Assembly (NCBI GenBank): GCA_002269645.1
Contig: NIVC01000322.1
Coordinates: forward strand, 62,001 to 126,000
Direction: 5' to 3'
Source: Macrostomum lignano
Lineage: Eukaryota
Length of the DNA: 64,000 nucleotides
Below, one piece after another: positions 35,058-64,000 of this stretch. The notes under the pieces are model-generated. The model was not told where the DNA came from. It did no database searches and was given only the letters and a program-made list of their open reading frames with translations. Every line of letters begins with the position of its first letter. The first letter of the stretch is position 1. The position numbers were made by a program, and so were the translations under genes.

Positions 35058-35080
35058 GTCTGTCTGTCTGTCTGTCTTTG

Positions 35081-35121
<41 letters not shown>

Positions 35122-36395: not shown

Positions 36396-36464
<69 letters not shown>

Positions 36465-36685: not shown

Positions 36686-36718
<33 letters not shown>

Positions 36719-37211
36719 AAGACAGACAGACAGACAGACAGACAGACACAGACAGCCCCACCTCCTCAACAGTCCAGTTGTGCATCTCTGACGCCCGCCA
36801 GGCCCGCCAAAGGTCCAAGGCGTTGCCTTTCCCGCCGCCGCCTTTTCTGCTACCAAAAGCAGCAGCCGCGGCGGTGTCGGCGGGGCTCCGTCCGGCAGCA
36901 TCGGAGCCGCTGTACACCCGCTCGAAACTGTGCACCTGGCTGAGCTCCTCTCTGTCGCTCGTCCGCTGCCAGTCGTGCAGGCGGCGCAGTGCCTCCAAGG
37001 AGGCGGCATCCAGCCGGCAGACGCGGGCATCAACCGCGAACCTGCAGGCGGCAACAGCGGCTGTTCCATCGTCCAGCGAGGACTCGGCGGGATTCGCGGG
37101 CTGCGATTGGCTGGCGAGGTAGTAGGCAGGCCGGGACTGCGAAGCCGCGGCAACCGCCACTATCAGAACCAGCATGCTGACTATGCCAAATGCTGATAGC
37201 CGCTGACTCAT
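28221..37211 (-). CDS. STIM: STIM (stromal interaction molecule), 695 aa; exons 37211..36762, 36370..36163, 35824..35650, 34504..34414, 34089..33835, 33759..33653, 30917..30724, 30374..30252, 29956..29719, 28467..28221
   Basis: Signal peptide; [19 protein letters not shown]; SAM domain ending LVLFGPP; HNPLKDF plus a TM helix; CC1; [12 protein letters not shown] and [14 protein letters not shown] (SOAR/CAD); basic tail. All nine intron phases match; total 2088 nt. Confidence 0.93.
28510..29710. repeat. CA/GA-rich compound minisatellite filling STIM intron 9
   Basis: Units GACACAGCA and CAGCAGACAACAGAACACACACA, read directly. Confidence 0.95.
30945..33300. repeat. 20-bp minisatellite (GGGGTCATTGGGGCTGAGCT), about 117 copies, STIM intron 6
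   Basis: Read directly; variant units recur in higher-order blocks. Confidence 0.98.
33328..33569. repeat. Interspersed GACTC/GAGTC-rich repeat, copy 1 (STIM intron 6)
   Basis: Colinear similarity to 63381-63619, e.g. GGGGCC(A/G)TAGA(A/G)TCGTAT..GCGTGCCAGAGTC..CACTGAGTTG..AAGCGCAT..AAGTTAAGCGC. Confidence 0.8.
34090..34376. repeat. 21-bp minisatellite (CACTGCGGTGTGGGAGTGACT) in STIM intron 4
   Basis: About 13 copies; the terminal unit supplies the acceptor. Confidence 0.96.
34543..35275. repeat. (TCTG)n microsatellite in STIM intron 3
   Basis: Read directly. Confidence 0.97.
35860..36085. repeat. GGGACT/GGAAT-based repeat in STIM intron 2
   Basis: Read directly; source of the GLGLGM and PSPSP pseudo-ORFs. 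Confidence 0.9.
36398..36755. repeat. (GACA)n microsatellite in STIM intron 1
   Basis: Read directly; starts about 6 nt from the donor site. Confidence 0.96.
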
Positions 37212-39683: not shown

Positions 39684-41924
39684 TGATGTAACCACACTCT
39701 GGTCGCGGGATAGGGCATGGGAACTTTTTCGAAAGTGCCTCCTATCCCGTGTACCCTCTGCACAGAGCTGTCGAGACTCGGCCAGGTCTCCGCCCAGGCC
39801 TGGAGACTCCCACTCTGCTGCCCCCCTCCTACTGCCTTGGTTCCGTCTCCCCTGCCGCCACACCTGCCTTTCCGGAGCTCCCTGTCCCTCTCTGTACCCT
39901 CCCCTCTACCTCATCTCCCCTGCACTCCACCCTATTCTTCTTGTACTTTCCCTTCCCCCCCCTCTTTTTGTCTCTCTCTGCACTCTTTTCCTGCACTGTC
40001 CCCTCCTTCTCTGTGTCTACTTACAGTATTTTGTGTGCTCACCGTCTCCCCATCCCCTCCCAAACTCCCAAACGGTGACGCAAGTCGTGTGACCCCTTCT
40101 TCCCCCCGATGACTCATCGATGACTCATCCCCCTCTCTTGCGCAACCTTTTCTCATGCCATTGTTCTCCTCCCTAAATTTCTCATGCGACACCAACCCCA
40201 CCTACGCTTCTATTGTTCTCGTTTTTGATTCTTTTGTTCTCTCGACCCCCACCAATTATCACATTTTCTCTGATTTTCTCTTTCTTTTGTTCTCGTTTTT
40301 GCACCTAATTATCACCTTTTCTCCTATGTTTACTTTTCCATTGTTCTCAGTTTTCCCCAATTATCCCTGATTTCTAATTCCTTTGTTCTCGACCCTAGCC
40401 CTATTGTTCTCCATGTTTGCTTGCGCAACACTTTCGCGACCACCCGCTGCGCTAATTATCCCCCCACCCCACCTCCGGATTGCGCAATTTCCTTATTTCT
40501 CATGTTGCTATGCTAGTCTCATGCTTCTCATCATGACTCATTCTGACGTCATTCTGCCGGCAGCCAATCAGAGAGAGGGAGCCATGGTAACGACCTTGAG
40601 GAGGCGGCTGTGAGGTCTATAAAAGGAAGTGATTTCGGCATGAGAATCATCAGTCGCATTCTACGCTTCCACTTCTGCCCACCTTCGGGCTCCTAGTCTT
40701 TCTTTAGACTTGCCGTCAGACTGAGTTCTGACCCATTTGTCTATTAGACGAATCCTTGCCGGTCCGCGGTCTGTTACCATCAAGTTATCCTTAGCTCCCC
40801 AAGCGAGCTCGCCTATCGGCCAGCGGTCTGATACCACCCAGCATCATCAGCATCGCCTGATCTACATCAGCGCCTTGCCGCTTTAGTGCATCGCCGCTTC
40901 ACTGTCTGCCTGACTGCAGCCTACAGCCACCCTTGGTCACTCTGCTTCTCTCTCTCTCTCTCTCTGTGCAGCTGCCGGTAAGTTCCTGTTACTAATTTGT
41001 GCTCTAATTGCCTTTGCTTATCCGGGGTTGCCTATTTCCCATTGTCTGATTAGAGAGCTGAGCCAATTGTGATACCGTATCTTTTGCTGTATTTTACTCA
41101 ATAGTGAAGCCGCCTAATTGCCTGATTATTCGCCTAAGGGCCTAATTATTAACTATTAACTAACTTCATCATTATTCAATCTTTCACCATCATTTAACTC
41201 ATGGCTTGCTAAGCCTTTCTCCCGGGGTGGCAAAGCATAAGGGAGTTTGGGTAAGCTAATGGCCTCTCCCCGTGCAAAGCCCGCCTGTGAGTGCGTGCTG
41301 CAGGTCCGCGTGTGCGTGCAGTAGAGGGATTAGCGAGTCTTGGCACAGAATGGCAGTAGGAAGGTTGCAACCCCATGCTAACGCGTCCCTTCGCCCTGAG
41401 CAATCTAAACTGGAGACAGTACATGTTCGCCTCATACTACTCTTAGTAATCAAAGTCGCAAGTCAGCCTTGCTCACAACCACAAAGGATCCCCTGCTGAG
41501 AAATCCTCCAGGATTGAGCCCAGAGTTCCCGATCATGCCCCAAGCAGAGTCCCTGTACTCAGCTGCATGTGTCTCCCCTGTTAGCCTAAATCCCCTGGTA
41601 ACCAATCCAGGCGGGGCTCTAGCCTCGAGAGGTCTAGTAGAAAGATCCAGGTGCGCCAGGTCACATAGAGTGGTGGCAGCCACTCGGTCATACCATGACC
41701 GAGTGACCAACTATTGCACCTTGGCTACAGGTGGGGTCCATGTGGGTCCTTGGCCCTCTGGTCACGAAGCGCTACCAAAAGCTACTAATCATGTGGGCAG
41801 GACAGTCTGGTGCTGGAGGTCCGTCAGGTCGTTGCCCGGTCATAGGCAGCCTTACGTCATTGCCCCCTCTAGTCATGCATTTGTCTCTCTACGGAGCGGA
41901 CAGGCGACAAGGGCGGTTACATCA
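39684..41924 (+). mobile_element. 2241-bp solo-LTR-like insertion with 10-bp terminal inverted repeats and a 4-bp TSD
   Basis: TGATGTAACC (39684) ... GGTTACATCA (41924), flanked by ATAC on both sides (39680-83, 41925-28). Internal CCAAT (about 40564), TATAAAA (about 40618) and GTAAGT (40978). Sharp GC shift against the AT-rich flanks. Confidence 0.85.
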
Positions 41925-43487
41925 ATACTAAATTTATATTTATATTTCCAAAAATTTCCTAGCTTTATTGTTCTTTCCCTTCAATTATAATATTAACTAC
42001 AATTATCTATACATAGTATAAGACGACATTTACACAAATAAAGTTTTTTCTAATAAGTTATTATAATAATTGTTTTAAGAAAATGCCTATGATATTTTAC
42101 AATAAACTTATGTTAACATTTTTTTGGCTATCAAATTTTCCATTATGTAATTAAAGTGTCATTTTGAACCTAAAAAGCTCAGAAAATATCTTAAGAAATA
42201 TGCCAACTAACCATATGTTTGATTGCACATCTTGTAATACATTCAAGCAAAATATGCAGCAATAGATATAGACATAACCCACAGAATGCACATTTTGGAA
42301 GCAAATATCCCCAGAAACTAGACTCTGGAAGGTTACATTACATGTATTCCAGAAAATTTAACATACAAATTGTCATGCATTTTTTTGGCATACAAATTTT
42401 GATGCACAAATTCATACCAATTTTTGGCATACAAATTATGGTGAATAAAATCACATGCCATACATGAAAATTGTAATGTAAATTAACATTTTATATAAAG
42501 TAAAGGAAAATTTATATAGTCTATATAGTCAATGATTAACTTTTTGCTTTTTGAAATTAACAATAAATTATTGCTAAGAGCATCAGTTTTATATTTATTC
42601 TGTAGGTATCATTTAAGTTTGTTTAAAATGAAAATATTTATAAATGTAAATTTTATTAAATATAAATTTTAAATATTTGTATTTGTAAATTTTTTAAAGT
42701 AAAATATTTGTTATATTTTATAGACTTTTCGTATGAAAACTTTTCTTAGAATACTCAACTTGCAAAAACCAAATGACCTTTTTAGGAAGAACTTTTGGCA
42801 TACATTTTAGCAAAAATTTTTATTTTTGGTATATACTGGCATAGGCCCTACATTTAGATGAGCTAGGATTCTTGATCTAGCATATACTATTATACAATCT
42901 AGACCCTAGCCTAGAAATACAAAAGTCAAACATGTCTTTAAGATATCATTGCAAAGCTGAGACATGTGTCAGAAACTGACAAAAAATACATTGCTACCTT
43001 ACTTTATAAGTTCTTTGGCATAAGAATTTATGTTAGAATGCATGATAGAATTCATTTTAACTAGGGGTCAGACGTGATCACGATCGTGATCACGATTTCA
43101 TGAATTCACGACCATTTTTTTCACAATTGTTATTTCCTTGAAACCGGTTCATGACAGTCGTGAATTTCTACTTTATTACATTTTTATTAGAAGTATAACT
43201 TTTCTACTTGGTTTACCAAAATATATGAACACAAATGTGTAAAAGAATAATACATTTTAAATAAGTTGACTTAACAGCATTACTGAGTAGCTATTATCAA
43301 TTTATAAATATTTCTTTTCTTGTTTTGTTATTTTCAACACTTGTAACTTACGAGCTCAAAATACGTGTATGCAAATTATATAAATTCACAATCACAATCA
43401 CGATCACGCCCGACTTTGAAAATTTCACGAAATTCCACGCCCGACCAAAATTTTCTGCTCTTTTAACCTCTAATTTTAATATACTTT

Positions 43488-43596
43488 GGCTATCTTCTCT
43501 AATTGTTCATTAAATTCCAACCCCACCCCCACCGCCCTTAAATAGAGGGCGAAATAATTCCAGAAATAATTAAACAAACAATTTGAGAAGATTGCC
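43488..43596. mobile_element. 109-bp MITE-like element, copy 1
   Basis: Imperfect ~29-bp TIRs (GGCTATCTTCTC.. / ..GAGAAGATTGCC); paralog at 44168-44276. Confidence 0.7.
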
Positions 43597-44167
43597 TATA
43601 CTTTATATTCATATAATAGGCTTTTTTTAAGTTAAAGCATAAAACTTTTGTCTACAAAATTTTAAAGCTGAATATAGTGTAAAAGTAAGAAATGCATCCA
43701 AAAACATGAATTCATTTTTTGTTTGAATTATCTGTCTAATAGAGAAAACATCTGTATAGGCAATATTGGTTGGGGGACACTTACATTTAAGGCACACTAG
43801 AATTTTCAAGCAAAAAGGCTATCTACTTGACTATGGAGCCTATATATTAGATAAAAAACTTGCTCAGTCCCTCTTGGCATTTTTCCTGGGTTTCTACTAA
43901 AGCCCTAAAGCCAAGGGACAATTGCCTATCTGGCTTAGCCCTTGATATAAATGTTATTTGATATTATGTTTAATTATGATATAACATTAGGTGCTTGACA
44001 TGGACAAACTTGTATCAAGAAAGGAATTTCAAAGTAAAAGTTAAACATAAAAGTCAAAATAGATAATAAACATTTTAGAATGAAGGAGTAGCCACAAATC
44101 TAAATGGTAAATTTTGAATGGTAGAGTCCATTTGACCAATTTCAAGTGAATGTATAGCAGAAATTAT

Positions 44168-44276
44168 GGCTATCTTCTAGTTCGTTCGTTTAATTCCAAC
44201 ACCCACCCCCACCACCCTTGAATAGAGGGCGAAATAATTCCGGAAATAATTAAACGAACGAAACTGAAGGATAGCC
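44168..44276. mobile_element. 109-bp MITE-like element, copy 2
   Basis: TIRs GGCTATCTTCTAGTTCGTTCGTTTAATT / AATTAAACGAACGAAACTGAAGGATAGCC; same core as copy 1 (CCACCCCCACC..AATAGAGGGCGAAATAATTCC). Confidence 0.75.
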
Positions 44277-45278
44277 GAAATAATATAATTAACACACATT
44301 ATATCCAAACCTTACCATGACTAGACACTAATATATATGTAATTTAATGACGATGTTATGTTGAACAGACCTGATGATAATAATAAGAGTTGACACTTCT
44401 GACTGACAGGTTGACAGTAAGTAGAAAAAATATTCGAAATTTTTCTGTATGCAGCATAACTTTTCAATATGCGCGAAAGTATATAATAACAAATTATAGG
44501 ACGGAATTTAGGTACAAATTAATATATATAGATAGCTAATTAATTATGATGCATCTATACTTATGCGAGTTACAATAGAACCAATGACAAAATTTATAAG
44601 CATAGCCTGTTAGATAAAAAATGGGTTGCGGCATCTGTCAAAGGTTTAAATTAGCAATTATACACGTGTATAATATTGTGCCTAATTTTGTAAAACGCTA
44701 TTCAGACTCCAAGCAGTAGTTTTTTTTTGTCCAGACTGAAATACAATACTGATTTGACACGATATACGTACACGTTGTCGTACATGACGTACACGTCAGA
44801 ATGTTAATTCTCAGAATTACATGTAATAGCACCGGCCCATGAAGGTACATGTACATGTACTAAGCGTTTTTTTAATGATTGGCGCCCCTTCAATATGGCA
44901 ACCCCAATAAATTAAATGGCGTTACCTCAAATGAAATGCATACATGCTGCGGCTTCCAAAAGACCTGCTTCAGCTGTGCCTGTGCGCGTACAGCTAGGCT
45001 AGATATTGTATTGGGCCGACTGATGCGTCATACGCAATCGCTGTCGTTTCGATCTCTCGATGTTCGTAACAAAATTTCAAAAACGACGAAATGTTGTAAA
45101 GAATTCCGCAGCGAAATCTTTGTGACATTTTTTTCATTCCTCTGTCTTGTTATGCAAATAAGTTTACAGCACAAAATTTTTATTCGGAGCGGACGCGCAG
45201 ACTCCAGCTCTCAGCAATAAACGTTTCAGACTCTCTTAGGACTCTTGCAGTTTTCTTGTGCATCTCCCAAGTTAATAC

Positions 45279-45360
45279 GGACGCGCTTGGAATCGAACCA
45301 GGAGTTGTGGCGGGTTGTCATGCGTTTATCAGACACATAAGTACCAACCGACCAAACCCC
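45279..45360 (-). other. Possible tRNA-derived SINE head or tRNA pseudogene fragment
   Basis: Perfect B-box GGTTCGATTCC on the minus strand (45299-45289) and a weak A-box upstream; no convincing cloverleaf. Confidence 0.25.
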
Positions 45361-45711
45361 AAGACACAGCTAGAGTGTACCACCATGCATGCCTCGATCA
45401 CCCGATTAGAAAGTCAGGGCCCAGTCTGAATGTGTGCATGAGTATAGTGTGTGCCTGCGTACAGTATTGGCGCGCTTGTATATGTGCTCAGAAGTCAGTG
45501 GAATGGGAAGAATTGCCGTCAGCGCTGCTTGTGGGAATTTCGTCGAAGGCATTGCGCTTAGGTTGCCTCACAATCCTACTGCAAATATGAATTATGTAAG
45601 CTAAATCTTTATCTACGAGCTGTCTGTCCGTGTAAAACGCTCGATAGACTGTAGGCCTCAAAAATTTTTATCACGTTCTCACTAAGAAAAATAATACAAA
45701 ATTGGTCATCC

Positions 45712-46650
45712 AGTCTTCCATTCTTCCGGTCTTCCGGTCTTCCGATCTTCCAGTCTTCCGATCTTCCAGTCTTCCAGTCTTCCAGTCTTTCGGTCTTCCA
45801 GTCTTCCGGTCTTCCAGTCTTCCGGTCTTCCAGTCTTCCGGTCTTCCAGTCTTCCGGTCTTCCAGTCTACCGGTCTTCCAGTCTTCCGGTCTTCCAGTCT
45901 TTCAGTCTTCTAGTCTACCAAAGTTTCAGTCGTCCAGTCTTCCGGTCTTCCGGTCTTCTAATATTCCATTCTTCCGGTCTTCCGGTCGTCCGGTCCTCCG
46001 TTCTCGATCCGCTCTTCCAAACTTCCAGTCTTCCAGTCTTCCAGTCTTCCAGTCTTCCGGTCTTCCAGTCTTCCAGTCTTTCAGTCTTCCAGTCTTTCAG
46101 TCTTCTAGTCTACCAAAGTTTCAGTCTTCCAGTCTTCCGGTCTTCCGGTCTTCCGGTCTTCTAGTATTCCATTCTTCCGGTCTTCCGGTCTTCTGGTCCT
46201 CCGTTCTCGATCCGCTCTTCCAAACTTCCAGTCTTCCAGTCTTCCAGTCTTCCAGTCTTCCGGTCTTCCAGTCTTCCGGTCTTCCAGTCTTCCGGTCTTC
46301 TAGTCTACCAAAGTTTCAGTCTTCCAGTCTACCAAAGTTTCAGTCTTCCAGTCTTCCGGTCTTCTAGTATTCCATTCTTCCGGTCTTCCGGTCTTCCGGT
46401 CCTCCGTTCTCGATCCGCTCTTCCAAACTTCCAGTCTTCCAGTCTTCCAGTCTTCCGGTCTTCCAGTCTTCCAGTCTTTCAGTCTTCCAGTCTTCCTCTC
46501 TTCGATGTTCTGATCTTCCATATCCGATCATCTAGTCTTCCCGTCTTTCTCTCCAGTCTTCCACTCTTTCGGTCTTCCAGTCTTCCAGTCTCTCTGTTTT
46601 CCAGTCTTCCGGTCTTCCAGTCTTCCAGTCTTCCTCTCTTCGATGTTCCG
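45712..46650. repeat. 8-bp repeat (TCTTCCAG/TCTTCCGG) with higher-order duplications
   Basis: Read directly; the block CTCCGTTCTCGATCCGCTCTTCCAAACTTCC recurs three times. Confidence 0.95.
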
Positions 46651-47119
46651 ATGTTCCGATTCGGATATAATTCAGATCCTAAAGTTAGCCCCAAAAACAA
46701 GGTACTTAACGACCAGCCAGCTCTGCTGATGGATAAAAGGTAGCCGCGAGCTCTGAGTATAAAGGGCCGGCCAAATCTGGCAGATCCGACGAATCTCAAC
46801 GGTCTCGGCTTGGGCGAAAACGCGCCAAGCGGTTGGCCAAGAAGGAAGCCACGGCTCCCAAAGCGGTGGCGCCCGTCATGGGTGCAAAAATGGCCTCTGC
46901 CAACAAGGAGGTTTCTTAGGAGCTACCTTTGCGGCAAAAGGCCAAGGCCGGAATCCCGGTAGTGTTCATTCAGGGTCGCGGCCAGGACCGGACACCTGAT
47001 TAACTTCAAAAAGTTTGGAAGGTTACTGACTCCATTTTGATTGGGCTGACTGTGAAGGAGGGAATCTCCATCGGCATTGATTCATGGAGTGTCAAGTAGC
47101 TGCCCAAAGCGTCGGCTCC

Positions 47120-47560
47120 GAAGGATCAGCGACTGCAGAAGCTGCTAGAGAAGTTCAACCCCGTTTTCTAGGGTGGTCTCAGCTGTTACACTGGTACGTG
47201 TACGTGAATCTCTGAAACTGCGAGTGAAGCCTGATGCGCGACCCAGGTTCATGAAGGTGCGGCAGGGGCTTTTTGCTTTGAAGTCCAAGATGGAGTTCAA
47301 AGCGAGCAACTCGAGTGGGAGATCCAGCAGCAGGAGACTAAAATTGAATTCCACATCTGCCAGTCCGTCACCAGCGCTGCCACAATCTTAGGACTTTCAG
47401 TCAGCCATGGGATTGCTGGAGGTAGTGGTGAGCGACAACGGACCGTATTTCGTGGAGCCAGGAGATGAGCAACTTCTTGACCAGCAACGGCATTCGGCAC
47501 ATCAAGGTTTCTCGATATCTTCCATCGTCCCTGCTGATGATCGGCAGGCAGTACTCCTCC
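47120..47560 (+). mobile_element. Internally deleted Ty3/Gypsy pol remnant
   Basis: QKLLEKFNPVF*GG...LKLRVKPDARPRFMKVRQ..FALKSKME (pre-RT) joined to HGLLEVVVSDNGPYF..EMSNFLTSNGIRHIKVSRY (integrase core). Confidence 0.8.
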
Positions 47561-48933
47561 CAAAAGGAGTACCATGACCTGCGACCCTGCGACCTTCGAA
47601 GAAGGCGATAGTGTCCATGAGAGAAGCGATTTTGCCAGTCAGACAGCAGGGCGGTGGCAACGTATTGGGCCTCAGAAAGCATCTGTCAAGTAATGACTCG
47701 GCTTTTTAATCAAACAACGCTGATATCATTCATAATTGTTTGGGAGTAATGAATTTCAAGGTTCCGTGCGGATACCTTAGGTTCAAGTAAGAACCATCGT
47801 TTGTTGTCTCTTATGTCATCATCTACAACAGATACGGCTGCTTTGCATTCGAGTGCAGAGGATAAAATATATTGAAATTAAAAAAAATATTAAAGCAACA
47901 TATAGGTGGCTGTTTGAGAATCCATATTGACTCATTAAAACAATCGACTGAATGAGTTTCTAAAAGGATTGAAAACCAAAAGATCAGAGAGGCTCCGCAG
48001 TGTAAAGGGTAGGCTCTTAGACTTTGTTGACAACTTTTAAGCAGTCGCTGTCAAAGTTCTTAACCAGCCCACTTGAGCGAGGTTCATACACAGTTGGTTA
48101 TGCATATAAACCGACACAACAATAACTGATAAAATGTTGTGGATTTTCCCATTGAATTCTTAAGCTACCTCGTAATTTGAAGCACCCAGTAACGCTATCG
48201 CACAATCTCCAGTTAAAAGTGAGCGCACCAAACATGCTACCCCCCCCCTCAATCAGAAATCCTGTCTATGCCAATAATGCTACGAGCTTCTTCGAATATG
48301 ATTGATTTAACAATACTGACAGGATCTGTCAAAAGGTATAATCCGTATTTATTCCCGGAATTCAAATTATTCCATCGGATCTGCCTTTTAACTTCTAGAG
48401 AGTTAGCTTTGCTTTGCCATGAGCATAAAAAATAAGCTCGATGTCGCTAAAGGTGGCCTGAATCAACTTGGAGTCACACTGCTCTGTCAGGATCTTGAAA
48501 AAGTGACTGGCACTTGACCCAGCTGGCTTGAAGGTCATATCCAATGCAGCGCAATATCCCAGCTGCCTAACATGCATTAGCTTCCTCCGACGCATGGGAT
48601 GAGACGCACATGCCAACCTGGCAAACTATGACTAGCACAATCCTTGCTACGAGCTACATGATGGTCCTATCACAGAGCGGGATAGGCTATCACAGAGCGG
48701 GTTCGCTTTTTCGCATTCTACTGCAGCCTATAAATTTTATACTCAGTAGAAGAGCTGCTAATTTTAATTTCGCCTACCCCGGATACCAGATCAGGACCTA
48801 AAAAACCTAAAAAAGCCATTGAAGATATGTGCGAATTAATGATGAGCATTAAAAATCCCTAAGTTTAAGGTGACAAGCTCCTGGTGGGTGCAAGAACTAA
48901 TACTCTGACCGAAAATAAGTTCCAAACTCACAG

Positions 48934-49322
48934 CCACAAACTCATTTGAAATTCGGAAGCTGTCGGCAGAGCTCAAGGATCGAATCGGGCGTTTGCGGAC
49001 GATCGATTGACGGAAACAAAAACCAAAACTACTTGAACTTGTCCTGCAGCCACACCACAACCCGCCCGAATGGTGGGAGGGGCAGCTCGCCGCTCCATCG
49101 CTTGTCTATTGCATCACCATCTACAACAGGCAGGACTGCTGCGCTGACCGACTCAGAAAATTCTCGCTGCAGGTGGACGGCGTCGAGTGCAACCGAGTGA
49201 ACCTGACGGAACCGTTCTCTGTGGCCAACTTCAGCTGCAACGCCTTTGGCAGCCGGGTTCGAGTGACGAACATGCTCAGCCACTTCTTGACCATTTGCGA
49301 GATCGAGGCTTACACTCTGTAA
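48934..49322 (+). pseudogene. F-type lectin (fucolectin/F5-F8 type C) domain exon with a 1-nt frameshift near 49060-49068
   Basis: CRQSS..RSIDGNKNQNY..SCSHT | PEWWEGQL..ITIYNRQDCCADRL..LTICEIEAY*. The fucose-binding H...RxDxxxxR motif is present. No upstream exon found. The frameshift could be an assembly indel. Confidence 0.8.
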
Positions 49323-49401
49323 GCTGAACTGTAAGCTGAACTGGTGAGTGAACACGTACTTCTTAAGTAGAAGGGCCGGCGCAACATTCAAAATCTACGG
49401 A

Positions 49402-50370
49402 AAAAGTTTTGAAAGCCACTTTTCGCCGAAAGAGACACTATGGAGATAGGAAGTTTTCATTTTTTCGTCACAAAAATTGAGGTGCCGGGCGTGTTTTGAT
49501 GTACTGCACTGCACCTGACTCACCTGAGTCTAATAATGAGTAACTCTAACTAGCCAGCCAGCCTAACTAACCAAACTGGCCTACTCCGGTGTACGCTGCT
49601 CTGTGTACTTTCTTTTTCTCTCCCCCTTGACATGATAATATTCAGTAGTGATCGATTCTGAGTTTTAAGTCCACTTACTTGTTTGTCTTTTAAGCCTATA
49701 TATTGGTCTCGCCACCTACCACCTCGTATCTCACATTCTTTGCAATATTTCGCTCGTCTCAAATACACAACTTCGTACTTGACTCAAACCAAGCCCACAG
49801 GCGGCCTTGTCATCGTTTACTGGGCGCGACTTGACAAAAATTGTTATTGCTTTTGATAGCAGGCAGATCCAGTGTTCATCTTTTGATATGTTGTGCCTTT
49901 CTTATAACTCATTGATGTCCATACAGCTTTTCTCATTTCTATTTCTCATTCTACGTACAATTGCATATGTCCTGTGCCTAGTAACCCTTAAAATGGCGCG
50001 GCTCAGCTCATTGGTTTTATGAACCTTTTTTTGTCATTCTAAGCTGACTGTGTAACAATATGTGTAACAGAGATGATAAAATCGATTCATAATATACCAA
50101 AGATTCGAGCTGTGCCATGCATTTTTATGATTTTAGGTACAGGAAATGTACGTAGAATAAAAAATGAACAAAGAATCCCAATTTTCTAAACGAAAAGCTT
50201 TATGAATATCAATAGAGAGCAATAAGAAAGGCACAACATATCAAAAGATGAACACTGGGTCTGTCTCTTATTGAGAGCAATAAACATTTTGTGCTGAAAA
50301 AATGAAAACTTCCTACAGTGTATCTCCGTAATGTATTTTTCGGCGAAAAGTGGCCTTCAAAGCTTTAGTG
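49402..50370. mobile_element. Foldback/TIR element with long imperfect inverted arms centred near 50050
   Basis: 49402-49477 plus 49842-50020 is the reverse complement of about 50370-50080 (e.g. CCACTTTTCGCCGAAA; CAGTGTTCATCTTTTGATATGTTGTGCCTTTCTTAT). Confidence 0.75.
49478..49836. mobile_element. 359-bp solo LTR nested in the left arm of the foldback element
   Basis: TG...CA ends with a 5-bp TSD AAAAT (49473-77, 49837-41); removing it restores colinearity with the right arm. Confidence 0.75.
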
Positions 50371-51321
50371 GTCCTTGAGAGTGAACTTAATCTGACAATG
50401 ACCTTGCTTGTTCTTTTTTGGTTGGTAGGTTTTCTTTTTTGTTGCAAGTTCGACTTTTCAACAATCGCCAAATGAGTCAGTCTAAGTTACTCATAGTAGT
50501 ACTAATTCGAACATGCTAAACTTTAAAATCTAGTGAAAAAAGGTTATATTTGACAGAAATAGGACACACGAAGAAGATTAAGAGTTGCTAGCTAAACTGC
50601 ATGCTTATTATACAACACACGTTCAATAAAACACAAAAATTAGGCTAAACAGAAGCTATGAAGAGTTTTTAATACTAAAAAACTCGAGTTGTTTACTCGT
50701 ATTTCTCGAGAGTAATATGTTTTTTTAATATCATAGCATAAAAATAAATTCTCTAAAAAGTATCACAGTGTGCTTTTCTATTCGAAAGTTTTAGCATCAT
50801 AAGATGAAATATCTAATCAACTAATTTTGAGGTTAATTCAAGTAAGCTATAAAACTAAAAACATCATAATTAAAAGGTTAAAACTATATTCAGCCTGAAA
50901 AAATGTTTTCTTTGCTTGAGTATCACACAACTATTTAAAATAAATAACTCATGTTTAAGAAAAAAACTCAGAAAAACTCAGAAGAAAAATAAACAAAAAT
51001 AGTAAAAGCACCCGCCAGATTTAAGTTGCCAACAATGTTTTGTTGCAAGCATTTTCTAATTTTTGTAGTAATACATGTAGATCAGAAATTTCATCTACCA
51101 ACCGTTATACCTGATCGCATATACCTTAACCTTTGTATCCAGTTATTAAAGTAGTTTTAAAGCTTCAAAAAAGCTTTAACAAAACCCCAAATCAATTCTA
51201 AAACTTTTCTGATCAACTTAAACCTGAATCCAATCCATAAAAGTTAAAAGTTGAAAACGTAATTCGTTTCTAAAACTCAGAACCAATTCAAATCCAGTGA
51301 AATTCACCCAGTATATCAAAT

Positions 51322-54300
51322 TCAGTCAGTTTCAGCCGCTCTGACGTCTCGGTTCCCTACGGCCGCATCCGAGTGCTCAGTAGTTTGCGTCTTCTGTCGT
51401 CGGCGTCTCTTCTTCTGTTTCTTCTCAAGCAGCTCTGTGATGCCTTTAATCTGGTCTTGTATGCCTTTTATGCTCGATTCCATGGAAATTATCTTTTCCA
51501 GTGTCGCGTTGGTGTCAGACTGCTGTCTCTGCACTTGAGGTCGACCGCTCAGGTCTTCCCGGCTAGATTGAGCTGTCAGATTTCTTTCCGGCCTGATGTC
51601 ATCTTGGGCGTCGTGACGTTTTAGCAGCGGTCGGCGGCTCGATCCGTCACCACTGCAAGCGATGTCGGCCAGCTTGTTGTCGAGGCCCTCCTCCAGCGAC
51701 TTCAGTTCCTTCCGGCTCCAGTCCGGGTCGGTCAGCAGTTTCGGTCGGATCCGGCGGAACTGCATGGCTTGAAAGCGGAGAAACCTAAGGTAGCGCTCTG
51801 GGTAGTTCTTAGGGGTGAGCCACCATTTCTAAAAAAGGAAATTGTCGTAACGAGACAGTGAAAAAATGATATAAATACCGACACAAGTGACAAGTTTATA
51901 ATGGGTTAACTGGGATGTGGTAGTAGATAGATACACGCACCTTATTGTTGTTCTCGTCTTCAGCTCCGTGAGGGCTGATTTTGGTTTGGCAGCAAAAGCA
52001 GTCGCTGAGCATCTTATAGATGTAGTAGAGGCAGGACAGAGGAGGCGGCACGGGACTGAGGCTCTCGTACTCTCGTAGCATAGAAAAGTAGGTCTTGCGC
52101 CAGATCCCCAAGGCTTCGTTGGCCATGCGGCTGACTCGAAGGTTGAACAGAGCAATCAGCAGGTTCAGCATAACAATGTTCACGAGCCCCATGAATAGGA
52201 ACAGCATCAGATTCTCGAACACGCCGATGCCCTGCACGTGAGCAGTCTTGCCGATGGTAACGTTGGTCAGCGATGGCGGGTTGAAGTCGATTTTGTCGAA
52301 ATTCGTAAACAAAATGTTAAACGGCAAAGTCATAACTTGAGTGAACGCGTCCCATCCGTACCAACTGCTGTTATATTTTTTCGAAGTCGTGTCCGTACTG
52401 GTCACCGGGAAAAGCAGGTTGAAGAAGAACACTCCAAAAGCGTAAATAAACACAGAAATGATGGCCATAAACGGGGCCAGATCGTTAAACAGCAGACTCC
52501 ACAGCATTGATACGATCGGCCCGATGACTCCCGAGTAGCTGAGGAAATGCACCCAGCGAAACATCAGCAGTCCGAAGGCGATGGTGAAGACCATCTGGGA
52601 GGGGTAGGCCTCTTGCAGAGGTCGATGCAATGCCAGCAGAGCCCACTTCCAAGCCAGGCCAACTATCATCGCCAAGATCACAGTGCAGTCGAAAAAGTTG
52701 AGCACCTCTTCGCAATAGTTCGGGCATCTGCAAATGTGTGCTTCGCCAATAAGGTAAGTTCGAATCTTCTTCCGCCTGCGCATGTCGATAATCTCCTGCA
52801 TGGTGAAGCTGATGGTGAACAGGACAATCACAATGTCGGAGTACCAGCCGGATTCGAAGCTTCTCTTGAAGTCGATAACGTACCAAGTAAAGAACAAGGT
52901 GAACGCTCCGAAAGATGCGCAATGGAGCCAAAATTTTGATAGCGGAGAGAACGAACGGTACAGAAAACTTCGAGAATTACTCGCCTCTGGTCCTGATGGA
53001 TTGGAATTTTGATGCTGCGGCTGTTGCTGCTGACTCTCCTCTCCGCAACAGCTGGGTTCGCGTCCTTGCTCGAAGTTTTTCTGTGCCAGGTTGAAGATAC
53101 AGTCGGTAGCAAACAGCTCATTGCAATTGGCCATTTCTATCATGGCAATGATGGTGCCCTGTTTTACCACGCCTTTCTCATTTCTGAAAGGAAACAACGG
53201 ACCCTTGACGCCCTTCTCGTCAGCGATTCGGCCTTGAATATAGTCGAAAAGCAGCTTTCTTTCGTCGGCGTCTGCGCTAGCAAACAACTCGTCGAGAGCG
53301 TTCACAGCGATGCTCAGTATTTTCTCGTGCAGCTGCTGCAACTTTGCATGCTTGCCGCGCGCCTTGGCTCGCATCTTGAGTATTTTCGGGCCCAGCTCAA
53401 CCAGCAAGCTGATGCTGGCAGGAATTAGCTCGAACTGACGAGTGAGAACCAGGTCAGGAAGAATCTCGTCCTTCTTGAAGAATGCAGCCATGTCGATGAT
53501 CAGCAGCTCAGAGGACAAATCAAACCGCTCACGGCTGCAAAATTTCTGCTGCCGAGGGAAGTGCTTGGCGGCGCTTGGTTCTTGAATCTTCTCAATGAGA
53601 TATTCAAACATTGCTGCTCCAATATTTGACGTGATGATATCGATTCGCAGGGCACTGCGCAAAATTTTGACCGAGTCCAACTCGATGGTCTTGAAGAGAA
53701 TCTCGCTGTCACGCTTACGGCGCCAGAGCGTCTCTGATTTTGGCTGCGGAGCGGAGAAATCCTTGTTATGATCGGCGACCGAAGTCAGCAACCTTTGAGC
53801 CGTTCGTCGGTCAGGAAGCTTTATCGATCGGCGAGCTGGGTCAATCAGCAGCAGAATTTCTGCATCTGGGGATTCCACCGCTGTCAGGAGTGCATCAGAG
53901 TCTTGCGCTCCATTGTTCTCACTTGTTTCTGTTTGTTTTTTGGAGAGTTCCTCGTAGAAGTTTTTTACTGCCTTTTCAGTTGTCTCCAGAGTTCCACGAT
54001 CGATCGCGAAGTCGATGCAAGACATACCGGCCTCCGTAAACTTTTGAAGCCTGAGGCCGTTTGATAGCAGATACCTAATGTTGGCCGTTTGGCCTCCTTC
54101 GCAGGCGAAATGGAGGCAGGTTGCGTTCTTGTTGGAGCCTTTTGGCACCGTCAGTTTCAGCAGCTCTGCATCCTTCTTATCAGACAATTCTGCCAGGGGT
54201 TGGATTATTTGCTTCAAATCGTACCTACTAGCAAATGTGTGCACGACATGCAAACTGTTTGAGCTGTAAAGCAATTTAACGAAATGTTCTTTGTAGCTGT

Positions 54301-55632
54301 GTGTCTTAGCTGCCTCATGGAGAACTTCGCGCAGCATAGTAGGATGCAGCTCTGCCGCGTGGAGACAATTTTGGCCCAGCTTGTTTTCCGCTTTGAGATC
54401 GACGTGTTTGCGAATCTCATCAAATTTTAGAAAGAAATCCGTCACTTTTTTGGATAAGTCGTCAGCTTTCACCTCGGTTCGATAGCACTTGAATAAATAA
54501 TGCAGCATGGTGTTTTTAAAGGTGTCAAGTTGGTACTTTTCTCTCGTTGGAGCTTGCTTTGGCACATTGGAACCGAAGACATCAAGAGCCAGACGGAAAG
54601 GCGATTGCCATCTTTCATTCAGCCGGAAAACAATTGCCCCATCATTTTGCTTTTGGATCGCAGCCTTTAGCACTGCGTCTGTACTTTGCCTATCTTTGTT
54701 GCTCCTAGCTACCACATGCAGACACATGTCACCGTTGCTGTCTTTCATCTCGATAACGGCATTGTCAACCGCTTCGATTAGAACTTTGCCCGTGTCAGGA
54801 TTGCAGTTGTACATGGCATAGTGTAGCACAGTTTGTTGGCTTTTGTTTTTCCAAGCCAAGCATTTATTTCCGAGCAGCTTCACAGCGTCCTCGAGAATTG
54901 AGCCTTTCTCTTTGCCTAAAGCTGCCACATGGAGACAGGTGTTACCGTTAGAATCTCCAGGTTCAAGAAGAGCACGAAGCCAATTTTTTTAATTAAATTC
55001 TTGGATAAGTGGCCGCAGAGTTTTGGCGGTGCACTTTTCCATGGCAATGTGCAACGGAGTCTGCAATAAATTGTTTTTATCGACGAGGCACGCGGTACTG
55101 AGTTGGATTTGATTGAATTCAGAACTTTTTCGCAGAAAGCCCCAAAGGCATTTGGATTTTTAGCTGCGCTGTGGGCGGCTGTGTTGCCATCTACGTCCTT
55201 GTGACTCAGGCAAGAAAGTTCTACACCGCTCAGTAACTGCTCAGCGGTTTCTGATCTGCAGTGCTCCAGTGCCAACTGCAATGGTGTCTCACTCCTGTCA
55301 TTCGCATGCGTCAGGCAGGCCAAGGAATTTGTCATGGCAACTACTTCAAGAATAACATCGTCATTTGTACGATTTCGAGCAGCATAGTGGGCGGCTGTAT
55401 TGTCATAAAAATCGCGCGTTGACAAGTTCGAAGCTCTCACTATGTGAACTCCGCTAGCCTTCCAATCCTCCCGAGAGAAGGTCATAGCAGAGAGCTGCAG
55501 TGGTGTGGCTCCATTACTGTTTGCTTTGAGCAGTACTGCAGTTCCGAGTGAGCTGACTGCGTCAATAAAATGTTTTGGACCGTTTTCAGGGTCCATTGCT
55601 GCTTTGTGAAGGTCAACAGCTGGATTGGTCAT
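51322..55632 (-). CDS. Ankyrin-repeat TRPM-like cation channel (about 1400 aa if repaired); exons 55632..51941 and 51828..51322; frameshift near 55120 and in-frame TAA at 54991-54989
   Basis: About 14 ANK-like repeats, an MHR4-like helical region, then S1-S6 (SPLSKFW, LNFFDC, IGPIVSM, NIVMLNLLIALF), TRP helix (IWRKTY..EYESLSPVPPP) and a C-terminal coiled coil. The phase-0 intron AAG|GTGCGT...TTTAG|AAA joins in frame. Confidence 0.85.
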
Positions 55633-55811
55633 CTCGATGGTCTTGGATTGAGCGGATCAGCTGGTTTCGTTTGTAACCTACTGAATTATAAAAAGCAATT
55701 ATTTGTATATGATTCGTTAAAACAAAATTTAAAATAATTTCTTAAATGGTATTTAGTGCGACTTAATTACTTTTTTGCTTGGCTTGACTTGAGCAGAAAT
55801 CACCCGGTAAA

Positions 55812-56100
55812 CAGCATTCCGTAGACAGCAACCCATAGACAGCAGCCCGTAGACAGCACCCCGGAGACAGCACCCCGGACACAGCACTCCGTAGACAGCA
55901 CCCCGGAGACAGCACCCCGGACACAGCACCCCGTAGACAGTACCTCGTAGACAGCACCCCATAGACAGCACCCCATAGACAGCACCCCGTAGACAGCACC
56001 CCATAGACAGCACCCCATAGACAGCACCCCATAGACAGCACCCCATAGACAGCACCCCATAGACAGCACCCCGTAGACAGCACCCCATAGACAGCACCTC
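55812..56100. repeat. 14-bp minisatellite (AGCACCCCATAGAC) upstream of the TRP gene
   Basis: Period 55981 to 55995. Confidence 0.93.
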
Positions 56101-56904
56101 GAGGAAGACTGCACTCTAAAGATGTACAGCACTCTAAATTCAGCACTTCTAAGACAGAACTCGCTCACTGGCAACATGCAGAGCATCAGACAGCAAAGAG
56201 AACAATCTTGACCCATTTTAATCTTACCCCTTCCAAATCGAAATCTCATCTCCAACTGTAATAATCTACGTATACAAGTACAAATATTATATAACAGATC
56301 GTACATCAAAGGAGGGGTTGTCCTACCACTTCAAAGTACATACGGTCATTGATAGGGTAGTATCGAGTATAAAAATATTGCATATCTGATCGTTTGTCTC
56401 GTGCATGTGCATTTACTACAACAACATCTAATACTATTATTTATTGCCAAAGAAAACAATTAATAAGACTATTTCATAACTTACAGCTGGAAAGTCCTGG
56501 CAGTTGAGCTCCTTGTTTACCATAAACTCGTGAAAAAATATTAAAAACAGAATATTCTCTGCGACAAAAACGAAACCCAATAAAACTTGCTGCTCATCTA
56601 TTTTATGGAGTGCCGCGAGGGTCTGCCTCAAACTGTACGGTTGGTTGGTAAAGACTCGGTCCTGCCTCTCTACAATAGAAAAACCAGCAATATGAGACCT
56701 CTGTACACATAGCCAAGGACAAGTAGCTAGCAGATGCTAAAAATAGTTCAAACCACGTACTCAGGTCTCTCACTGGTGGCCTGATTCTTTCGAATCTGAA
56801 ACTAAACTCAAGCAGTGTCTAAAATTATCTATCTTTAGTAGCTAATTTATTTTGAGTCAATTGGAATTGCAAAGTGTGATAGAATTCTACTAACGCTTCA
56901 GACA

Positions 56905-58305
56905 CTAAAAGTCACTGAGACGCTTCAGACACTAAAAAACACCCCAGACACTCAAATTCACCAAGACGCTTTAGTCTGGCCTCAGCCTTCCAAAGTCTCC
57001 GAGACGCTTCAGACACTCAAAATCTACTAGACGCTTCAGTCACTCAAGTCACTAAGACGCTGCAGTCACCCAAAGTCACCAAGACGCTTCAGTCAACTCA
57101 AAGTCACCAAGACGCTGCAGTCAACTCAAAGTCACCAAGACGCTTCAGTCAACTCAAAGTGACCAAGACGCTTCAGTCAACTCAAAGTGACCAAGACGCT
57201 TCAGTCAACTCAAAATCACCAAGACGCTGCAGTCAACTCAAAGTCACCAAGATGCTTCAGTCAACTCAAAGTCACCAAGATGCTTCAGTCAACTCAAAGT
57301 CACCAAGATGCTTCAGTCAACTCAAAGTCACCAAGACGCTTCAGTCAACTCAAAGTCACCAAGACGCTTCAGTCACTCAAGTCACTAAGACGCTGCAGTC
57401 ACCCAAAGTCACCAAGACGCTTCAGTCAACTCAAAGTCACCAAGACGCTTCAGTCAACTCAAAGTCACCAAGATGCTTCAGTCACTCAAGTCACTAAGAC
57501 GCTGCAGTCACCCAAAGTCACCAAGACGCTTCAGTCAACTCAAAGTCACCAAGACGCTTCAGTCAACTCAAAGTCACCAAGATGCTTCAGTCAACTCAAA
57601 GTCACCAAGATGCTTCAGTCAACTCAAAGTCACCAAGACGCTTCAGTCACTCAAAGTCACCAAGACGCTTCAGTCACTCAAGTCACTAAGACGCTGCAGT
57701 CACCCAAAGTCACCAAGACGCTTCAGTCAACTCAAAGTCACCAAGACGCTTCAGTCAACTCAAAGTCACCAAGACGCTTCAGTCAACTCAAAGTCACCAA
57801 GATGCTTCAGTCAACTCAAAGTCACCAAGATGCTTCAGTCAACTCAAAGTCACCAAGACGCTTCAGTCACTCAAAGTCACCAAGACGCTTCAGTCACTCA
57901 AGTCACTAAGACGCTGCAGTCACCCAAAGTCACCAAGACGCTTCAGTCAACTCAAAGTCACCAAGACGCTTCAGTCAACTCAAAGTCACCAAGACGCTTC
58001 AGTCACTCAAGTCACTAAGACGCTGCAGTCACCCAAAGTCACCAAGACGCTTCAGTCAACTCAAAGTCACCAAGACGCTTCAGTCAACTCAAAGTCACCA
58101 AGATGCTTCAGTCACTCAAGTCACTAAGACGCTGCAGTCACCCAAAGTCACCAAGACGCTGCAGTCAACTCAAAGTCACCAAGACGCTTCAGTCACTCAA
58201 AGTCACCAAGACGCTTCAGTCAACTCAAAGTCACCGAGACGCTGCAGTCAACTCAAAGTCACCAAGACGCTTCAGTCACTCAAAAGCACCGAGACGCTTC
58301 AGACA
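56905..58305. repeat. ~28-bp minisatellite (GTCACCAAGACGCTTCAGTCAACTCAAA) with higher-order structure
   Basis: Read directly; 26-27-bp variant units recur periodically. Confidence 0.96.
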
Positions 58306-58617
58306 TTAAAAGTCCAAGTAGCACATTTTCCATGCACATAAAATCTGTATCTGTGTAAACGTATTAGCGTACCATTCAAATAGAACTATATAAAGCCTTT
58401 ATTTTAACAATTTTTGGCACCAAAATATGAATTACTTTAGTTTCTCGATCGTTGCATTGATAAGAAAAATGATATAGTTTAATGTTAGCTCATAAAAAGA
58501 CAACTGGAACTAATTAAAAATCCTGTCAGGGAGCAAATCTGCGTGTCGATCATGCGGACATTCTTTTTAAGACAAAGATAAAATGCAGCAGCATAAGTCA
58601 GAAAAGAATATTCTGTT

Positions 58618-64000
<5,383 letters not shown>

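What the first reader, a model, noticed from the sequence alone, without database searches (positions are those of the whole stretch)
51322..55632. Chimeric TRP channel: TRPA-like ankyrin stack on a TRPM-type channel core
Seen: about 14 ANK-like repeats, often alternating TPL- and TxxH-type, directly precede an MHR4-like region and TRPM-style S1-S6, TRP helix, PPP motif and coiled coil. I see no SLOG/MHR1-3 or Nudix domain. The pore (PFNILFTNFD) and TRP box (WRKTY) diverge from the TRPM consensus (PYWxxxGE, WKFQR). About 3.7 kb is one exon, unlike the intron-rich neighbours, suggesting retroduplication. Known: canonical TRPM channels lack ankyrin repeats, while TRPA and TRPN have long stacks. 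Inference: a domain-shuffled sensory channel with possibly altered selectivity; its relation to the TRPS/TRPM clades needs testing.
Basis: partly seen in the sequence, partly recalled or inferred. Interest (0 to 1): 0.7.

Follow-up and report, generated by a model that had tools for sequence, protein, structure and literature searches.

The report
Ankyrin-bearing TRPM-like flatworm channel gene
This is a gene of the free-living flatworm Macrostomum lignano for an ion channel that joins a long ankyrin-repeat stack to a TRPM-type pore; the design is already known from the schistosome meclonazepam target TRPM_MCLZ, and this copy is one of dozens of paralogs and has a frameshift and a premature stop.

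Summary
On the minus strand at 55632..51322 lies a two-exon gene. Its conceptual 1399-aa product has about 15 ankyrin repeats, an MHR4-like linker, a TRPM-type S1-S6 core, a TRP helix (WRKTY, PPP) and a C-terminal heptad helix. It has no SLOG/MHR1-3 or Nudix domain.

The organism is Macrostomum lignano. By sequence, profile and predicted fold, the channel core is closest to TRPM, not to TRPA, TRPN or TRPC.

The architecture is not a new chimera.

In my trees the window gene falls in a strongly supported subfamily (bootstrap 99), named members all M. lignano apart from one environmental contig. It groups only weakly (about 50%) with a second M. lignano group plus TRPM_MCLZ.

Paralogs share the giant-exon-plus-small-last-exon structure and the intron position, so recent retroduplication of this gene is not supported.

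Verdict: new member of a known kind, possibly a young pseudogene. Modest interest.

The parts
51322..55632 (-). Whole gene: two exons, conceptual 1399-aa ankyrin-TRPM-like channel
   Evidence: ORFs and manual model. About 99% identical across the main exon to the fused UniRef model P0001 of M. lignano.
53909..55632 (-). Ankyrin-repeat region (aa 1-575), about 15 repeats alternating between TPL(H/Q) and T-x-x-H types
   Evidence: Motif scan, ANK HMM, PDB hits to NOMPC and other ankyrin proteins. Collinear with paralog P0021.
55097..55098 (-). Frame change: two surplus bases (GT) between codon TCA (55101..55099) and codon ACC (55096..55094)
   Evidence: Three-frame translation. Ankyrin-like coding continues in the new frame upstream of the only possible acceptor site, and the alignment with P0021 runs through it.
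54989..54991 (-). In-frame TAA stop (position 215 of the conceptual protein), inside an ankyrin repeat
   Evidence: Homologous coding sequence lies on both sides. The P0001 gene model skips this zone with a predicted intron.
53492..53908 (-). Subfamily-specific linker (aa 576-714) with the 'LIDPxxRxLKLPD' and 'ELDSxxILR' motifs
   Evidence: Conserved among M. lignano paralogs. No match to canonical TRPM.
52946..53491 (-). MHR4-like region plus pre-S1 (aa 715-896), including the invariant 'RQFxLIP' motif
   Evidence: hhalign to canonical TRPM starts at aa 715. The linker HMM and BLAST hit TRPM_MCLZ orthologs consistently, but canonical TRPMs only marginally. Invariant columns in A2.
52139..52945 (-). 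S1-S6 channel core (aa 897-1165): S1 897-920, S2 931-953, S3 977-1001, S4 1006-1031 (H1029), S5 about 1045-1074, pore helix 1092-1109, S6 from 1137
   Evidence: AlphaFold2 helices (model residue + 215 = protein residue). PDB and fold matches to TRPM. Residue mapping.
52289..52360 (-). Pore helix and filter region (aa 1092-1115), 'LPFNILFTNFD'; N1106 aligns with Y1038 of Sm.TRPM_MCLZ
   Evidence: Y1038A attenuates TRPM_MCLZ currents (PMC10788528).
52034..52138 (-). TRP helix with 'WRKTY' and the 'PVPPP' motif (aa 1166-1200)
51829..51940 (-). GT-AG intron, 112 nt, phase 0, just before the conserved 'WW..YP..Y..F.FQA' motif
   Evidence: The paralog P0005 locus L001 has an intron at the same position, and the P0021 locus L002 probably does too.
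51322..51828 (-). Last exon (aa 1232-1399 plus TGA): conserved post-TRP motif, disordered stretch, heptad helix at aa 1340-1371 (51409..51504)

Best explanation
The locus is a Macrostomum lignano member of the flatworm 'TRPM-like' channels that carry N-terminal ankyrin repeats in place of the SLOG/MHR1-3 module. The characterised member of that family is TRPM_MCLZ, the schistosome meclonazepam target.

The window gene is not the TRPM_MCLZ orthologue. It belongs to a separate, strongly supported paralogous subfamily that has expanded in M. lignano.

Inferred mechanism, by homology:
- Four subunits form a non-selective, Ca2+-permeable cation channel, held together by the TRPM-type core and a C-terminal coiled coil.
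- The S1-S4 voltage-sensor-like domain and the TRP helix form a ligand and Ca2+ pocket that gates S6.
- The cytoplasmic ankyrin stack, attached through the MHR4-like region, takes the place of the nucleotide-binding SLOG domain as the regulatory or interaction module.
- The natural stimulus is unknown. The expansion in a free-living worm suggests sensory diversification.

This particular copy has a frameshift and a nonsense codon in the ankyrin region. It is therefore either a young pseudogene, an N-terminally truncated gene, or mis-assembled at those two points.
For: Shown:
- Organism and paralog family.
- The core is closest to TRPM by sequence (TRPM1/2/3/8/4 at E 4e-10 to 1e-6), by profile (ordinary TRPM2-like and TRPM3-like proteins follow the flatworm hits; hhalign aa 715-1221 against canonical TRPM, E 3e-36) and by predicted fold (all 50 top-ranked matches listed are TRPM, E about 1e-12 to 3e-10).
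- Collinear profile alignment with TRPM_MCLZ orthologues: aa 185-1209 against residues 56-1137, probability 100%, E 9e-41.
- Identity of those orthologues: P0213 is CAH8438365.1 and P0280 is CAH8481013.1, the accessions used in PMC10788528. H946, Y1038, R1120 and T1121 are at the published positions.
- The MHR4-like region hits TRPM_MCLZ consistently, but canonical TRPMs only marginally.
- In two NJ analyses all ankyrin-bearing flatworm sequences form one clade (bootstrap 50 and 48). The window subfamily has bootstrap 90 and 99. The second M. lignano group plus TRPM_MCLZ has bootstrap 78 in the larger alignment.
- The intron-poor structure and the intron position are shared with paralogs. Sm.TRPM_MCLZ has three exons (PMC10788528).
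- The residues that coordinate Ca2+ in TRPM2 (recalled from my own knowledge) appear to be kept: E and D in S2, N and D in S3, by my reading of the alignments.

Inferred from PMC10788528: non-selective, Ca2+-permeable conduction and ligand gating through the S1-S4 pocket.
Against: - Monophyly of the ankyrin-bearing sequences has only about 50% NJ bootstrap support, and no ML or Bayesian tree could be run.
- For the TM core alone, the window subfamily is about equally distant from TRPM_MCLZ, the second M. lignano group and canonical TRPMs.
- The ankyrin region shows only generic ankyrin similarity, so an independent gain of ankyrin repeats is not strictly excluded.
- TRPS was not included, because no labelled sequence was available.
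- No expression or functional data exist for this gene. Its frame is broken twice, and the transcript-based NCBI annotation has no protein at 90% identity or more for it.
Confidence: 0.8

Rival explanations
1. One reading: a novel chimeric sensory channel made by recent domain shuffling (a TRPA-type ankyrin stack fused to a TRPM core) and spread by retroduplication.
For: - The architecture is real.
- The gene has one intron in 4.3 kb, whereas M. lignano genes average about 5 introns (PMC5730564).
- The neighbouring STIM-like gene has many exons.
Against: - The same architecture is already published for flatworm TRPM_MCLZ (PMC10788528, PMC11731825, PMC12861061) and occurs in trematodes, cestodes and M. 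lignano, so it predates the divergence of these flatworm lineages.
- Divergent paralogs at 30-45% identity share the exon structure and the intron position.
- The ankyrins show no specific affinity to TRPA.
Confidence: 0.05
2. The gene is intact and functional. The frameshift and the TAA are assembly or polishing errors, or polymorphisms of one copy, in a repetitive, partly duplicated PacBio-based genome.
For: - The remaining 1,180 or so codons are open.
- The assembly is Canu/PacBio polished with Pilon and has large duplicated blocks of at least 95% identity (PMC5730564).
- Another family locus, L002, also shows a frame change inside the core, which hints at indel noise.
Against: - A TAA substitution is not a typical long-read error.
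- Two lesions lie within 110 nt of each other.
- The independent P0001 model, which differs at several residues, also had to skip exactly this zone.
- No transcript-based NCBI protein corresponds to this gene.
Confidence: 0.3
3. The channel belongs to TRPA, TRPN or TRPC, the families that normally carry ankyrin repeats, and the TRPM resemblance is superficial.
For: A long ankyrin stack. The best single PDB hit overall is NOMPC, but that is because of its ankyrin repeats.
Against: - The NOMPC TM domain scores only 17.6 bits, against 37-41 bits for TRPM cores.
- With the core HMM, the TRPN sequences score 36-46 bits against about 110-120 bits for TRPM and TRPM_MCLZ sequences. A TRPA1-like protein (P0257) gives no hit at E<1e-3.
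- No TRPA or TRPC chain appears at E<=0.01 among the best 60 PDB sequences listed.
- All 50 top-ranked fold matches listed are TRPM.
- The MHR4-like region aligns to TRPM.
Confidence: 0.02
4. The ankyrin-bearing window subfamily and TRPM_MCLZ acquired ankyrin repeats independently, or the window subfamily is a separate offshoot of SLOG-bearing TRPMs. The shared architecture would then be convergent.
For: - TM-core distances to TRPM_MCLZ and to canonical TRPM are similar.
- Bootstrap for the joint clade is only about 50%.
- The ankyrin similarity is generic.
Against: - Both NJ analyses recover one ankyrin-bearing clade and no canonical TRPM falls inside it.
- The MHR4-like region is specifically closer to TRPM_MCLZ.
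- Same phylum, same domain order, same intron poverty.
Confidence: 0.15

Closest known systems
TRPM_MCLZ (Sm.TRPM_MCLZ, Smp_333650), the flatworm 'TRPM-like' clade that is the meclonazepam target (PMC10788528, PMC11731825, PMC12861061)
   Same: - Domain order: ankyrin repeats, then an MHR4-like linker, S1-S6, TRP helix and C-terminal helices, with no SLOG or Nudix.
- Collinear profile homology.
- Same clade in the NJ trees.
- Intron-poor gene.
- S4 histidine (H1029, aligned with H946) and the PPP motif are conserved.
   Different: - Only about 19% identity.
- The window gene sits in a different, strongly supported subfamily. The second M. lignano group (P0059, P0090, P0196 and others) is the closer relative of TRPM_MCLZ.
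- More ankyrin repeats (about 15).
- The pore residue Y1038 is N here. The TRP-domain residues R1120 and T1121 are L and S.
- Many paralogs instead of the single gene described per parasite.
- This copy has a broken reading frame.
Canonical TRPM channels (TRPM2/3/4/5/8; TRPM alpha and beta clades)
   Same: MHR4, pre-S1, S1-S6 and TRP helix are homologous (E 3e-36). Best fold matches. Residues at the S2/S3 Ca2+ site kept by my reading of the alignments. C-terminal heptad helix.
   Different: No SLOG/MHR1-2 or MHR3 match; ankyrin repeats in their place. TRP box WRKTY instead of WKFQR. Filter region LFTNFD instead of (I/Y)(F/Y)GE. No Nudix or kinase domain.
TRPN (NOMPC) and TRPA1
   Same: A long N-terminal ankyrin stack ahead of a 6-TM TRP core.
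   Different: The TM core is only distantly similar: 17.6 bits to NOMPC, 36-46 bits for TRPN with the core HMM, and no hit for a TRPA1-like protein. They have no MHR4-like region. The ankyrin similarity is generic.
TRPS (CED-11-like, sister family of TRPM; PMC7306681)
   Same: A TRPM-related core with a divergent TRP domain.
   Different: TRPS has SLOG and Nudix domains and no ankyrin repeats (PMC7306681). The window protein has neither domain and about 15 ankyrin repeats. The relationship was not tested by phylogeny here.

Membership tests
Flatworm ankyrin-bearing 'TRPM-like' channels (TRPM_MCLZ family) | N-terminal ankyrin repeats in place of the MHR1/2-SLOG module | tested here: met
   About 15 repeats. 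No match to TRPM N-terminal regions.
Flatworm ankyrin-bearing 'TRPM-like' channels (TRPM_MCLZ family) | Full-length collinear homology to experimentally characterised TRPM_MCLZ | tested here: met
   hhalign aa 185-1209 against residues 56-1137 of P0212, probability 100%, E 9e-41. Identity of the reference checked by accession and by key residues.
Flatworm ankyrin-bearing 'TRPM-like' channels (TRPM_MCLZ family) | Groups with TRPM_MCLZ, apart from SLOG-bearing TRPMs, in a phylogeny | tested here: inconclusive
   Recovered in both NJ trees, but with bootstrap 50 and 48. TM-core distances alone do not discriminate.
Flatworm ankyrin-bearing 'TRPM-like' channels (TRPM_MCLZ family) | One-to-one orthology with TRPM_MCLZ | tested here: not met
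   The window lies in a separate subfamily (bootstrap 99). Another M. lignano group is sister to TRPM_MCLZ (bootstrap 78).
Flatworm ankyrin-bearing 'TRPM-like' channels (TRPM_MCLZ family) | [quoted passage not shown] | not testable with these tools
   Requires heterologous expression. Only the S4 histidine equivalent (H1029) could be checked.
Canonical TRPM | TRPM-type S1-S6 core, TRP helix and MHR4/pre-S1 | tested here: met
Canonical TRPM | N-terminal melastatin region with the SLOG domain (MHR1/2) and MHR3 | tested here: not met
   No alignment upstream of aa 715. No PDB sequence match to TRPM N-termini.
TRPA / TRPN | TM core closest to TRPA1 or NOMPC | tested here: not met
TRPS (soromelastatin) | SLOG and Nudix domains, no ankyrin repeats | tested here: not met
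   No SLOG or Nudix; ankyrin repeats present. Definition from PMC7306681.
TRPS (soromelastatin) | Phylogenetic grouping with CED-11-like sequences | not tested

The most novel reading that the evidence does not exclude
The window gene represents an undescribed second subfamily of ankyrin-bearing TRPM-like channels. This subfamily has radiated into about 20 or more divergent paralogs in the free-living flatworm M. lignano, each further duplicated by recent genome duplication, whereas the papers read here describe a single TRPM_MCLZ per parasite. That would make it a lineage-specific sensory-receptor radiation. If the whole ankyrin-bearing clade proves to be sister to all SLOG-bearing TRPM/TRPS channels, it would also preserve the ancestral ankyrin state that Himmel et al. 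inferred was lost before the TRPM-TRPS split.
Probability: 0.3. Interest if true: 0.55.

Novelty: new member of a known kind. Interest (0 to 1): 0.3.

Why it matters
TRPM_MCLZ is a validated anthelmintic target, and its unusual ankyrin-for-SLOG architecture has so far been discussed only for parasites. A transgenesis-capable free-living flatworm that carries dozens of relatives offers a tractable system for three questions: what these channels sense, how an ankyrin stack substitutes for the SLOG domain, and how the S1-S4 drug pocket varies. The clade also bears on when ankyrin repeats were lost or gained in the TRPM/TRPS lineage. The particular copy in this window adds little by itself, especially if it is a pseudogene.

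Tried and rejected
1. A 38-nt GT..AG mini-intron (55098..55061) would restore the frame. I rejected it because ankyrin-like coding ('ACLVDKNNLLQ') continues in the new frame upstream of the would-be acceptor, and because the paralog P0021 aligns straight through.

2. The roughly 370-nt intron used by the UniRef model P0001 ('HANDR|TLGKEKG') skips both lesions. However, it joins two repeats out of phase, so it is probably a gene-finder rescue.

3. The word-indexed protein searches returned M. lignano paralogs for the channel and otherwise only ankyrin-only or very weak hits. The exhaustive profile search was needed to reach the parasite orthologues and the ordinary TRPMs.

4. Group-HMM scoring of the TM core favoured the canonical-TRPM HMM. 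I judged this to be biased by the greater diversity of that HMM. Pairwise BLAST showed near-equidistance.

5. I tested for specific similarity of the last ankyrin pair to TRPM_MCLZ. It was no better than to decoy ankyrin proteins, so I dropped that argument.

6. Dead ends:
- The FASTA supplement of PMC12861061 is not held.
- The DNA of P0001 is not on record, so no dN/dS and no second-copy check of the lesions was possible.
- No ML tree program was available.
- TRPS could not be included.
Full report
**What is in the sequence**

The feature lies on the minus strand. Three ORFs tile it: 55632..54916, 54928..51896 (1010 aa) and 51765..51322. Reading the DNA gives this model:
- ATG at 55632.
- A frame change caused by two surplus bases at 55098/55097.
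- An in-frame TAA at 54991..54989.
- A 112-nt GT-AG phase-0 intron at 51940..51829.
- TGA at 51324..51322.

With X placed at the two lesions, the conceptual product has 1399 aa.
- Residues 1-575 hold 11 clear and about 4 degenerate ankyrin repeats.
- Residues 897-1191 form S1-S6 and a long S6-TRP helix in an AlphaFold2 model (mean pLDDT 71.6).
- 'LPFNILFTNFD', 'WRKTY' (aa 1178-1182), 'PVPPP' and a heptad helix at aa 1340-1371 are all present.

The '3.7 kb single exon', however, is not an intact reading frame.

**Which channel family the core resembles**

- Against PDB sequences, the core (aa 880-1225) hits TRPM1, 2, 3, 8 and 4 at E 4e-10 to 1e-6. The NOMPC TM domain gets 17.6 bits and TRPV1 reaches E 1e-3. 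No TRPA or TRPC chain appears at E<=0.01 among the best 60 sequences listed.
- The NOMPC hit that tops the list is due to its ankyrin repeats.
- A profile of the linker plus channel from six paralogs (A1) was searched against 1.84 billion representative proteins and found 1381 relatives. Flatworm sequences come first, followed by ordinary TRPM2-like and TRPM3-like proteins that match only the pre-S1-to-TRP part.
- With a core-only HMM, the TRPM and TRPM_MCLZ sequences checked score about 110-120 bits (a fish TRPM6 59), TRPN sequences 36-46 bits, and a TRPA1-like protein gives no hit.
- Profile-profile comparison aligns aa 715-1221 to canonical TRPMs from about 200 residues before S1 onward (E 3e-36). 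That confirms an MHR4-like region. Nothing upstream of aa 715 matches MHR1-3.
- All 50 top-ranked Foldseek matches of the model are TRPM structures.

**Organism and relatives**

The closest protein, P0001, is about 99% identical across the main exon. It is a fused Macrostomum lignano gene model covering this or a near-identical locus. The named relatives in M. lignano have the same ankyrin-plus-channel layout, usually in two or three near-identical copies.

The exhaustive search also found ankyrin-bearing relatives in Opisthorchis, Dicrocoelium and Schistocephalus. A search from the Dicrocoelium protein added Schistosoma, Trichobilharzia, Fasciola, Taenia, Echinococcus and others.

**This architecture is already described**

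- Park et al. (PMC10788528) identified Sm.TRPM_MCLZ (Smp_333650) as the meclonazepam target. It has a long N-terminus with multiple ankyrin-like repeats, six TM helices and a TRP helix, and is encoded by three exons. Its I-V relationship is linear with a reversal potential near 0 mV, and it gives Ca2+ signals in HEK293 cells.
- The review PMC11731825 states that it lacks MHR1/2-SLOG and has ankyrin-like modules instead.
- PMC12861061 (2026) places it in a clade next to the TRPMs and suggests the name 'TRPM-like'.

I verified that my parasite hits are this channel:
- P0213 is CAH8438365.1 and P0280 is CAH8481013.1, the accessions used in that paper.
- The 1380-aa Schistosoma sequences have H946, Y1038, R1120 and T1121 at the published positions.

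**How the window gene relates to TRPM_MCLZ**

The window subfamily profile aligns collinearly with the TRPM_MCLZ profile over 876 columns: aa 185-1209 against residues 56-1137, probability 100%, E 9e-41.

I built two NJ trees rooted on TRPN: the TM core (140 sequences, 298 columns) and MHR4+TM (116 sequences, 391 columns), each with 200 bootstraps. Both recover all ankyrin-bearing flatworm sequences as one clade with no canonical TRPM inside it, but with bootstrap of only 50 and 48. Within that clade:
- The window subfamily is well supported (bootstrap 90 and 99; the window gene with P0021, 99-100).
- A second M. lignano group joins TRPM_MCLZ (bootstrap 37 and 78).

The MHR4-like 185 residues consistently hit all TRPM_MCLZ orthologues (best E 1e-6 to 0.04), but canonical TRPMs only marginally.

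Two caveats apply. TM-core distances alone are about equal to all three groups. The ankyrin similarity is generic. I conclude that the gene is a paralogous member of the known ankyrin-bearing flatworm family and not the TRPM_MCLZ orthologue. A single origin of the architecture is likely but not proven.

**Retroduplication**

The gene is intron-poor compared with the M. lignano average of about 5 introns per gene (PMC5730564) and with the multi-exon STIM-like neighbour. But the paralogs share this structure:
- P0005 has one 4.7-kb exon, an intron at the homologous position just before the 'WW..YP' motif, and a small last exon.
- The P0021 locus has the same layout.
- The schistosome gene has three exons.

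Intron poverty is therefore a family trait. At most it reflects an old event, not a recent retrocopy of this gene.

**The two lesions**

The alignment of the conceptual N-terminus with the paralog P0021, whose N-terminal region is uninterrupted, is collinear through both lesions (37% identity over 579 columns). They therefore interrupt real coding sequence.
- A 38-nt mini-intron or the P0001-style 370-nt intron could restore a frame, but each would cut repeats out of register.
- The rest of the gene, about 1,180 codons, is open.
- The P0001 model, which comes from a slightly different copy, also skips this zone.
- No transcript-based NCBI protein matches the gene at 90% identity or more.
- On the other hand, the genome is a Pilon-polished PacBio assembly with large duplicated blocks (PMC5730564), and another family locus also shows a frame change.

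I rate a real, young disruption at about 0.5, an assembly artefact or polymorphism at about 0.3, and a truncated or rescued product at the remainder.

**Likely mechanism**

This is inferred by homology, not shown.
- A tetrameric, non-selective, Ca2+-permeable cation channel.
- The residues at the positions of the TRPM2 Ca2+ site (recalled from my own knowledge) are conserved in the family: E and D in S2, N and D in S3, by my reading of the alignments.
- The S4 position that sets meclonazepam sensitivity is His here (H1029), as in the sensitive schistosomes.
- The pocket's TRP-domain residues differ (L and S instead of R and T).
- The pore-proximal Tyr that is needed for TRPM_MCLZ currents is Asn here.
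- The filter reads LFTNFD instead of the TRPM (F/Y)GE.

Selectivity and ligands may therefore differ. The ankyrin stack, attached through the MHR4-like region, replaces the nucleotide-binding SLOG module.

**Novelty and verdict**

The finding is real, but the architecture is known. The papers I could search describe only parasite TRPM_MCLZ. I found none that describes the M. lignano expansion or the window subfamily, so that part may be new. I file the gene as a new member of a known kind, with modest interest, reduced further for this copy by its broken frame.

Noticed in passing
P0034 (protein MEE4247282.1; 5.1-kb contig), not in the window: A 1537-aa member of the window's flatworm subfamily is deposited as 'MAG: Kangiellaceae bacterium'. 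This is presumably flatworm DNA binned into a bacterial metagenome-assembled genome.
   Followed up: partly
window 33652..58848, minus strand: The UniRef model P0001 ('EF-hand domain-containing protein', 1988 aa) fuses three things: an upstream exon (58705..58848), the TRP gene, and a multi-exon STIM-like gene (33652..49394). It also reads an 8-nt satellite (45705..46634) as 'EDWKTGRL' peptide repeats.
   Followed up: partly
L002:9663-9675: The locus of the closest paralog, P0021, changes frame inside the channel core. The annotated 1225-aa protein stops there, while homology continues in another frame and then in a last exon at about 9991..10071. This is either another disrupted copy or an indel error.
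   Followed up: no
L001:7740-10290: The single 2.5-kb intron of paralog P0005 contains a called ferritin gene (8684..9199) on the same strand.
   Followed up: no
P0221 (Paragonimus westermani 'Cu+-exporting ATPase'): This annotated ATPase carries a TRPM_MCLZ-like N-terminus (58% identity over 30% of the Dicrocoelium protein). It is probably a fused gene model.
   Followed up: no
window 55801..56098 and many other sites (e.g. 58893..61050, 30941..33292, 25622..26920, 3504..5151): The window is packed with micro- and minisatellite arrays. Examples are a 14-mer x21 array about 170 bp upstream of the TRP gene's ATG, (ACAG)n over 2.1 kb, and a 20-mer x118 array. These arrays account for the extreme AT- and GC-skew blocks seen.
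   Followed up: partly
window 52547..52549 (H1029): The S4 residue that determines meclonazepam sensitivity in schistosome TRPM_MCLZ (His in sensitive species, Tyr in insensitive ones) is His in the window protein and in two close paralogs. Other M. lignano paralogs have A, S or R there.
   Followed up: partly
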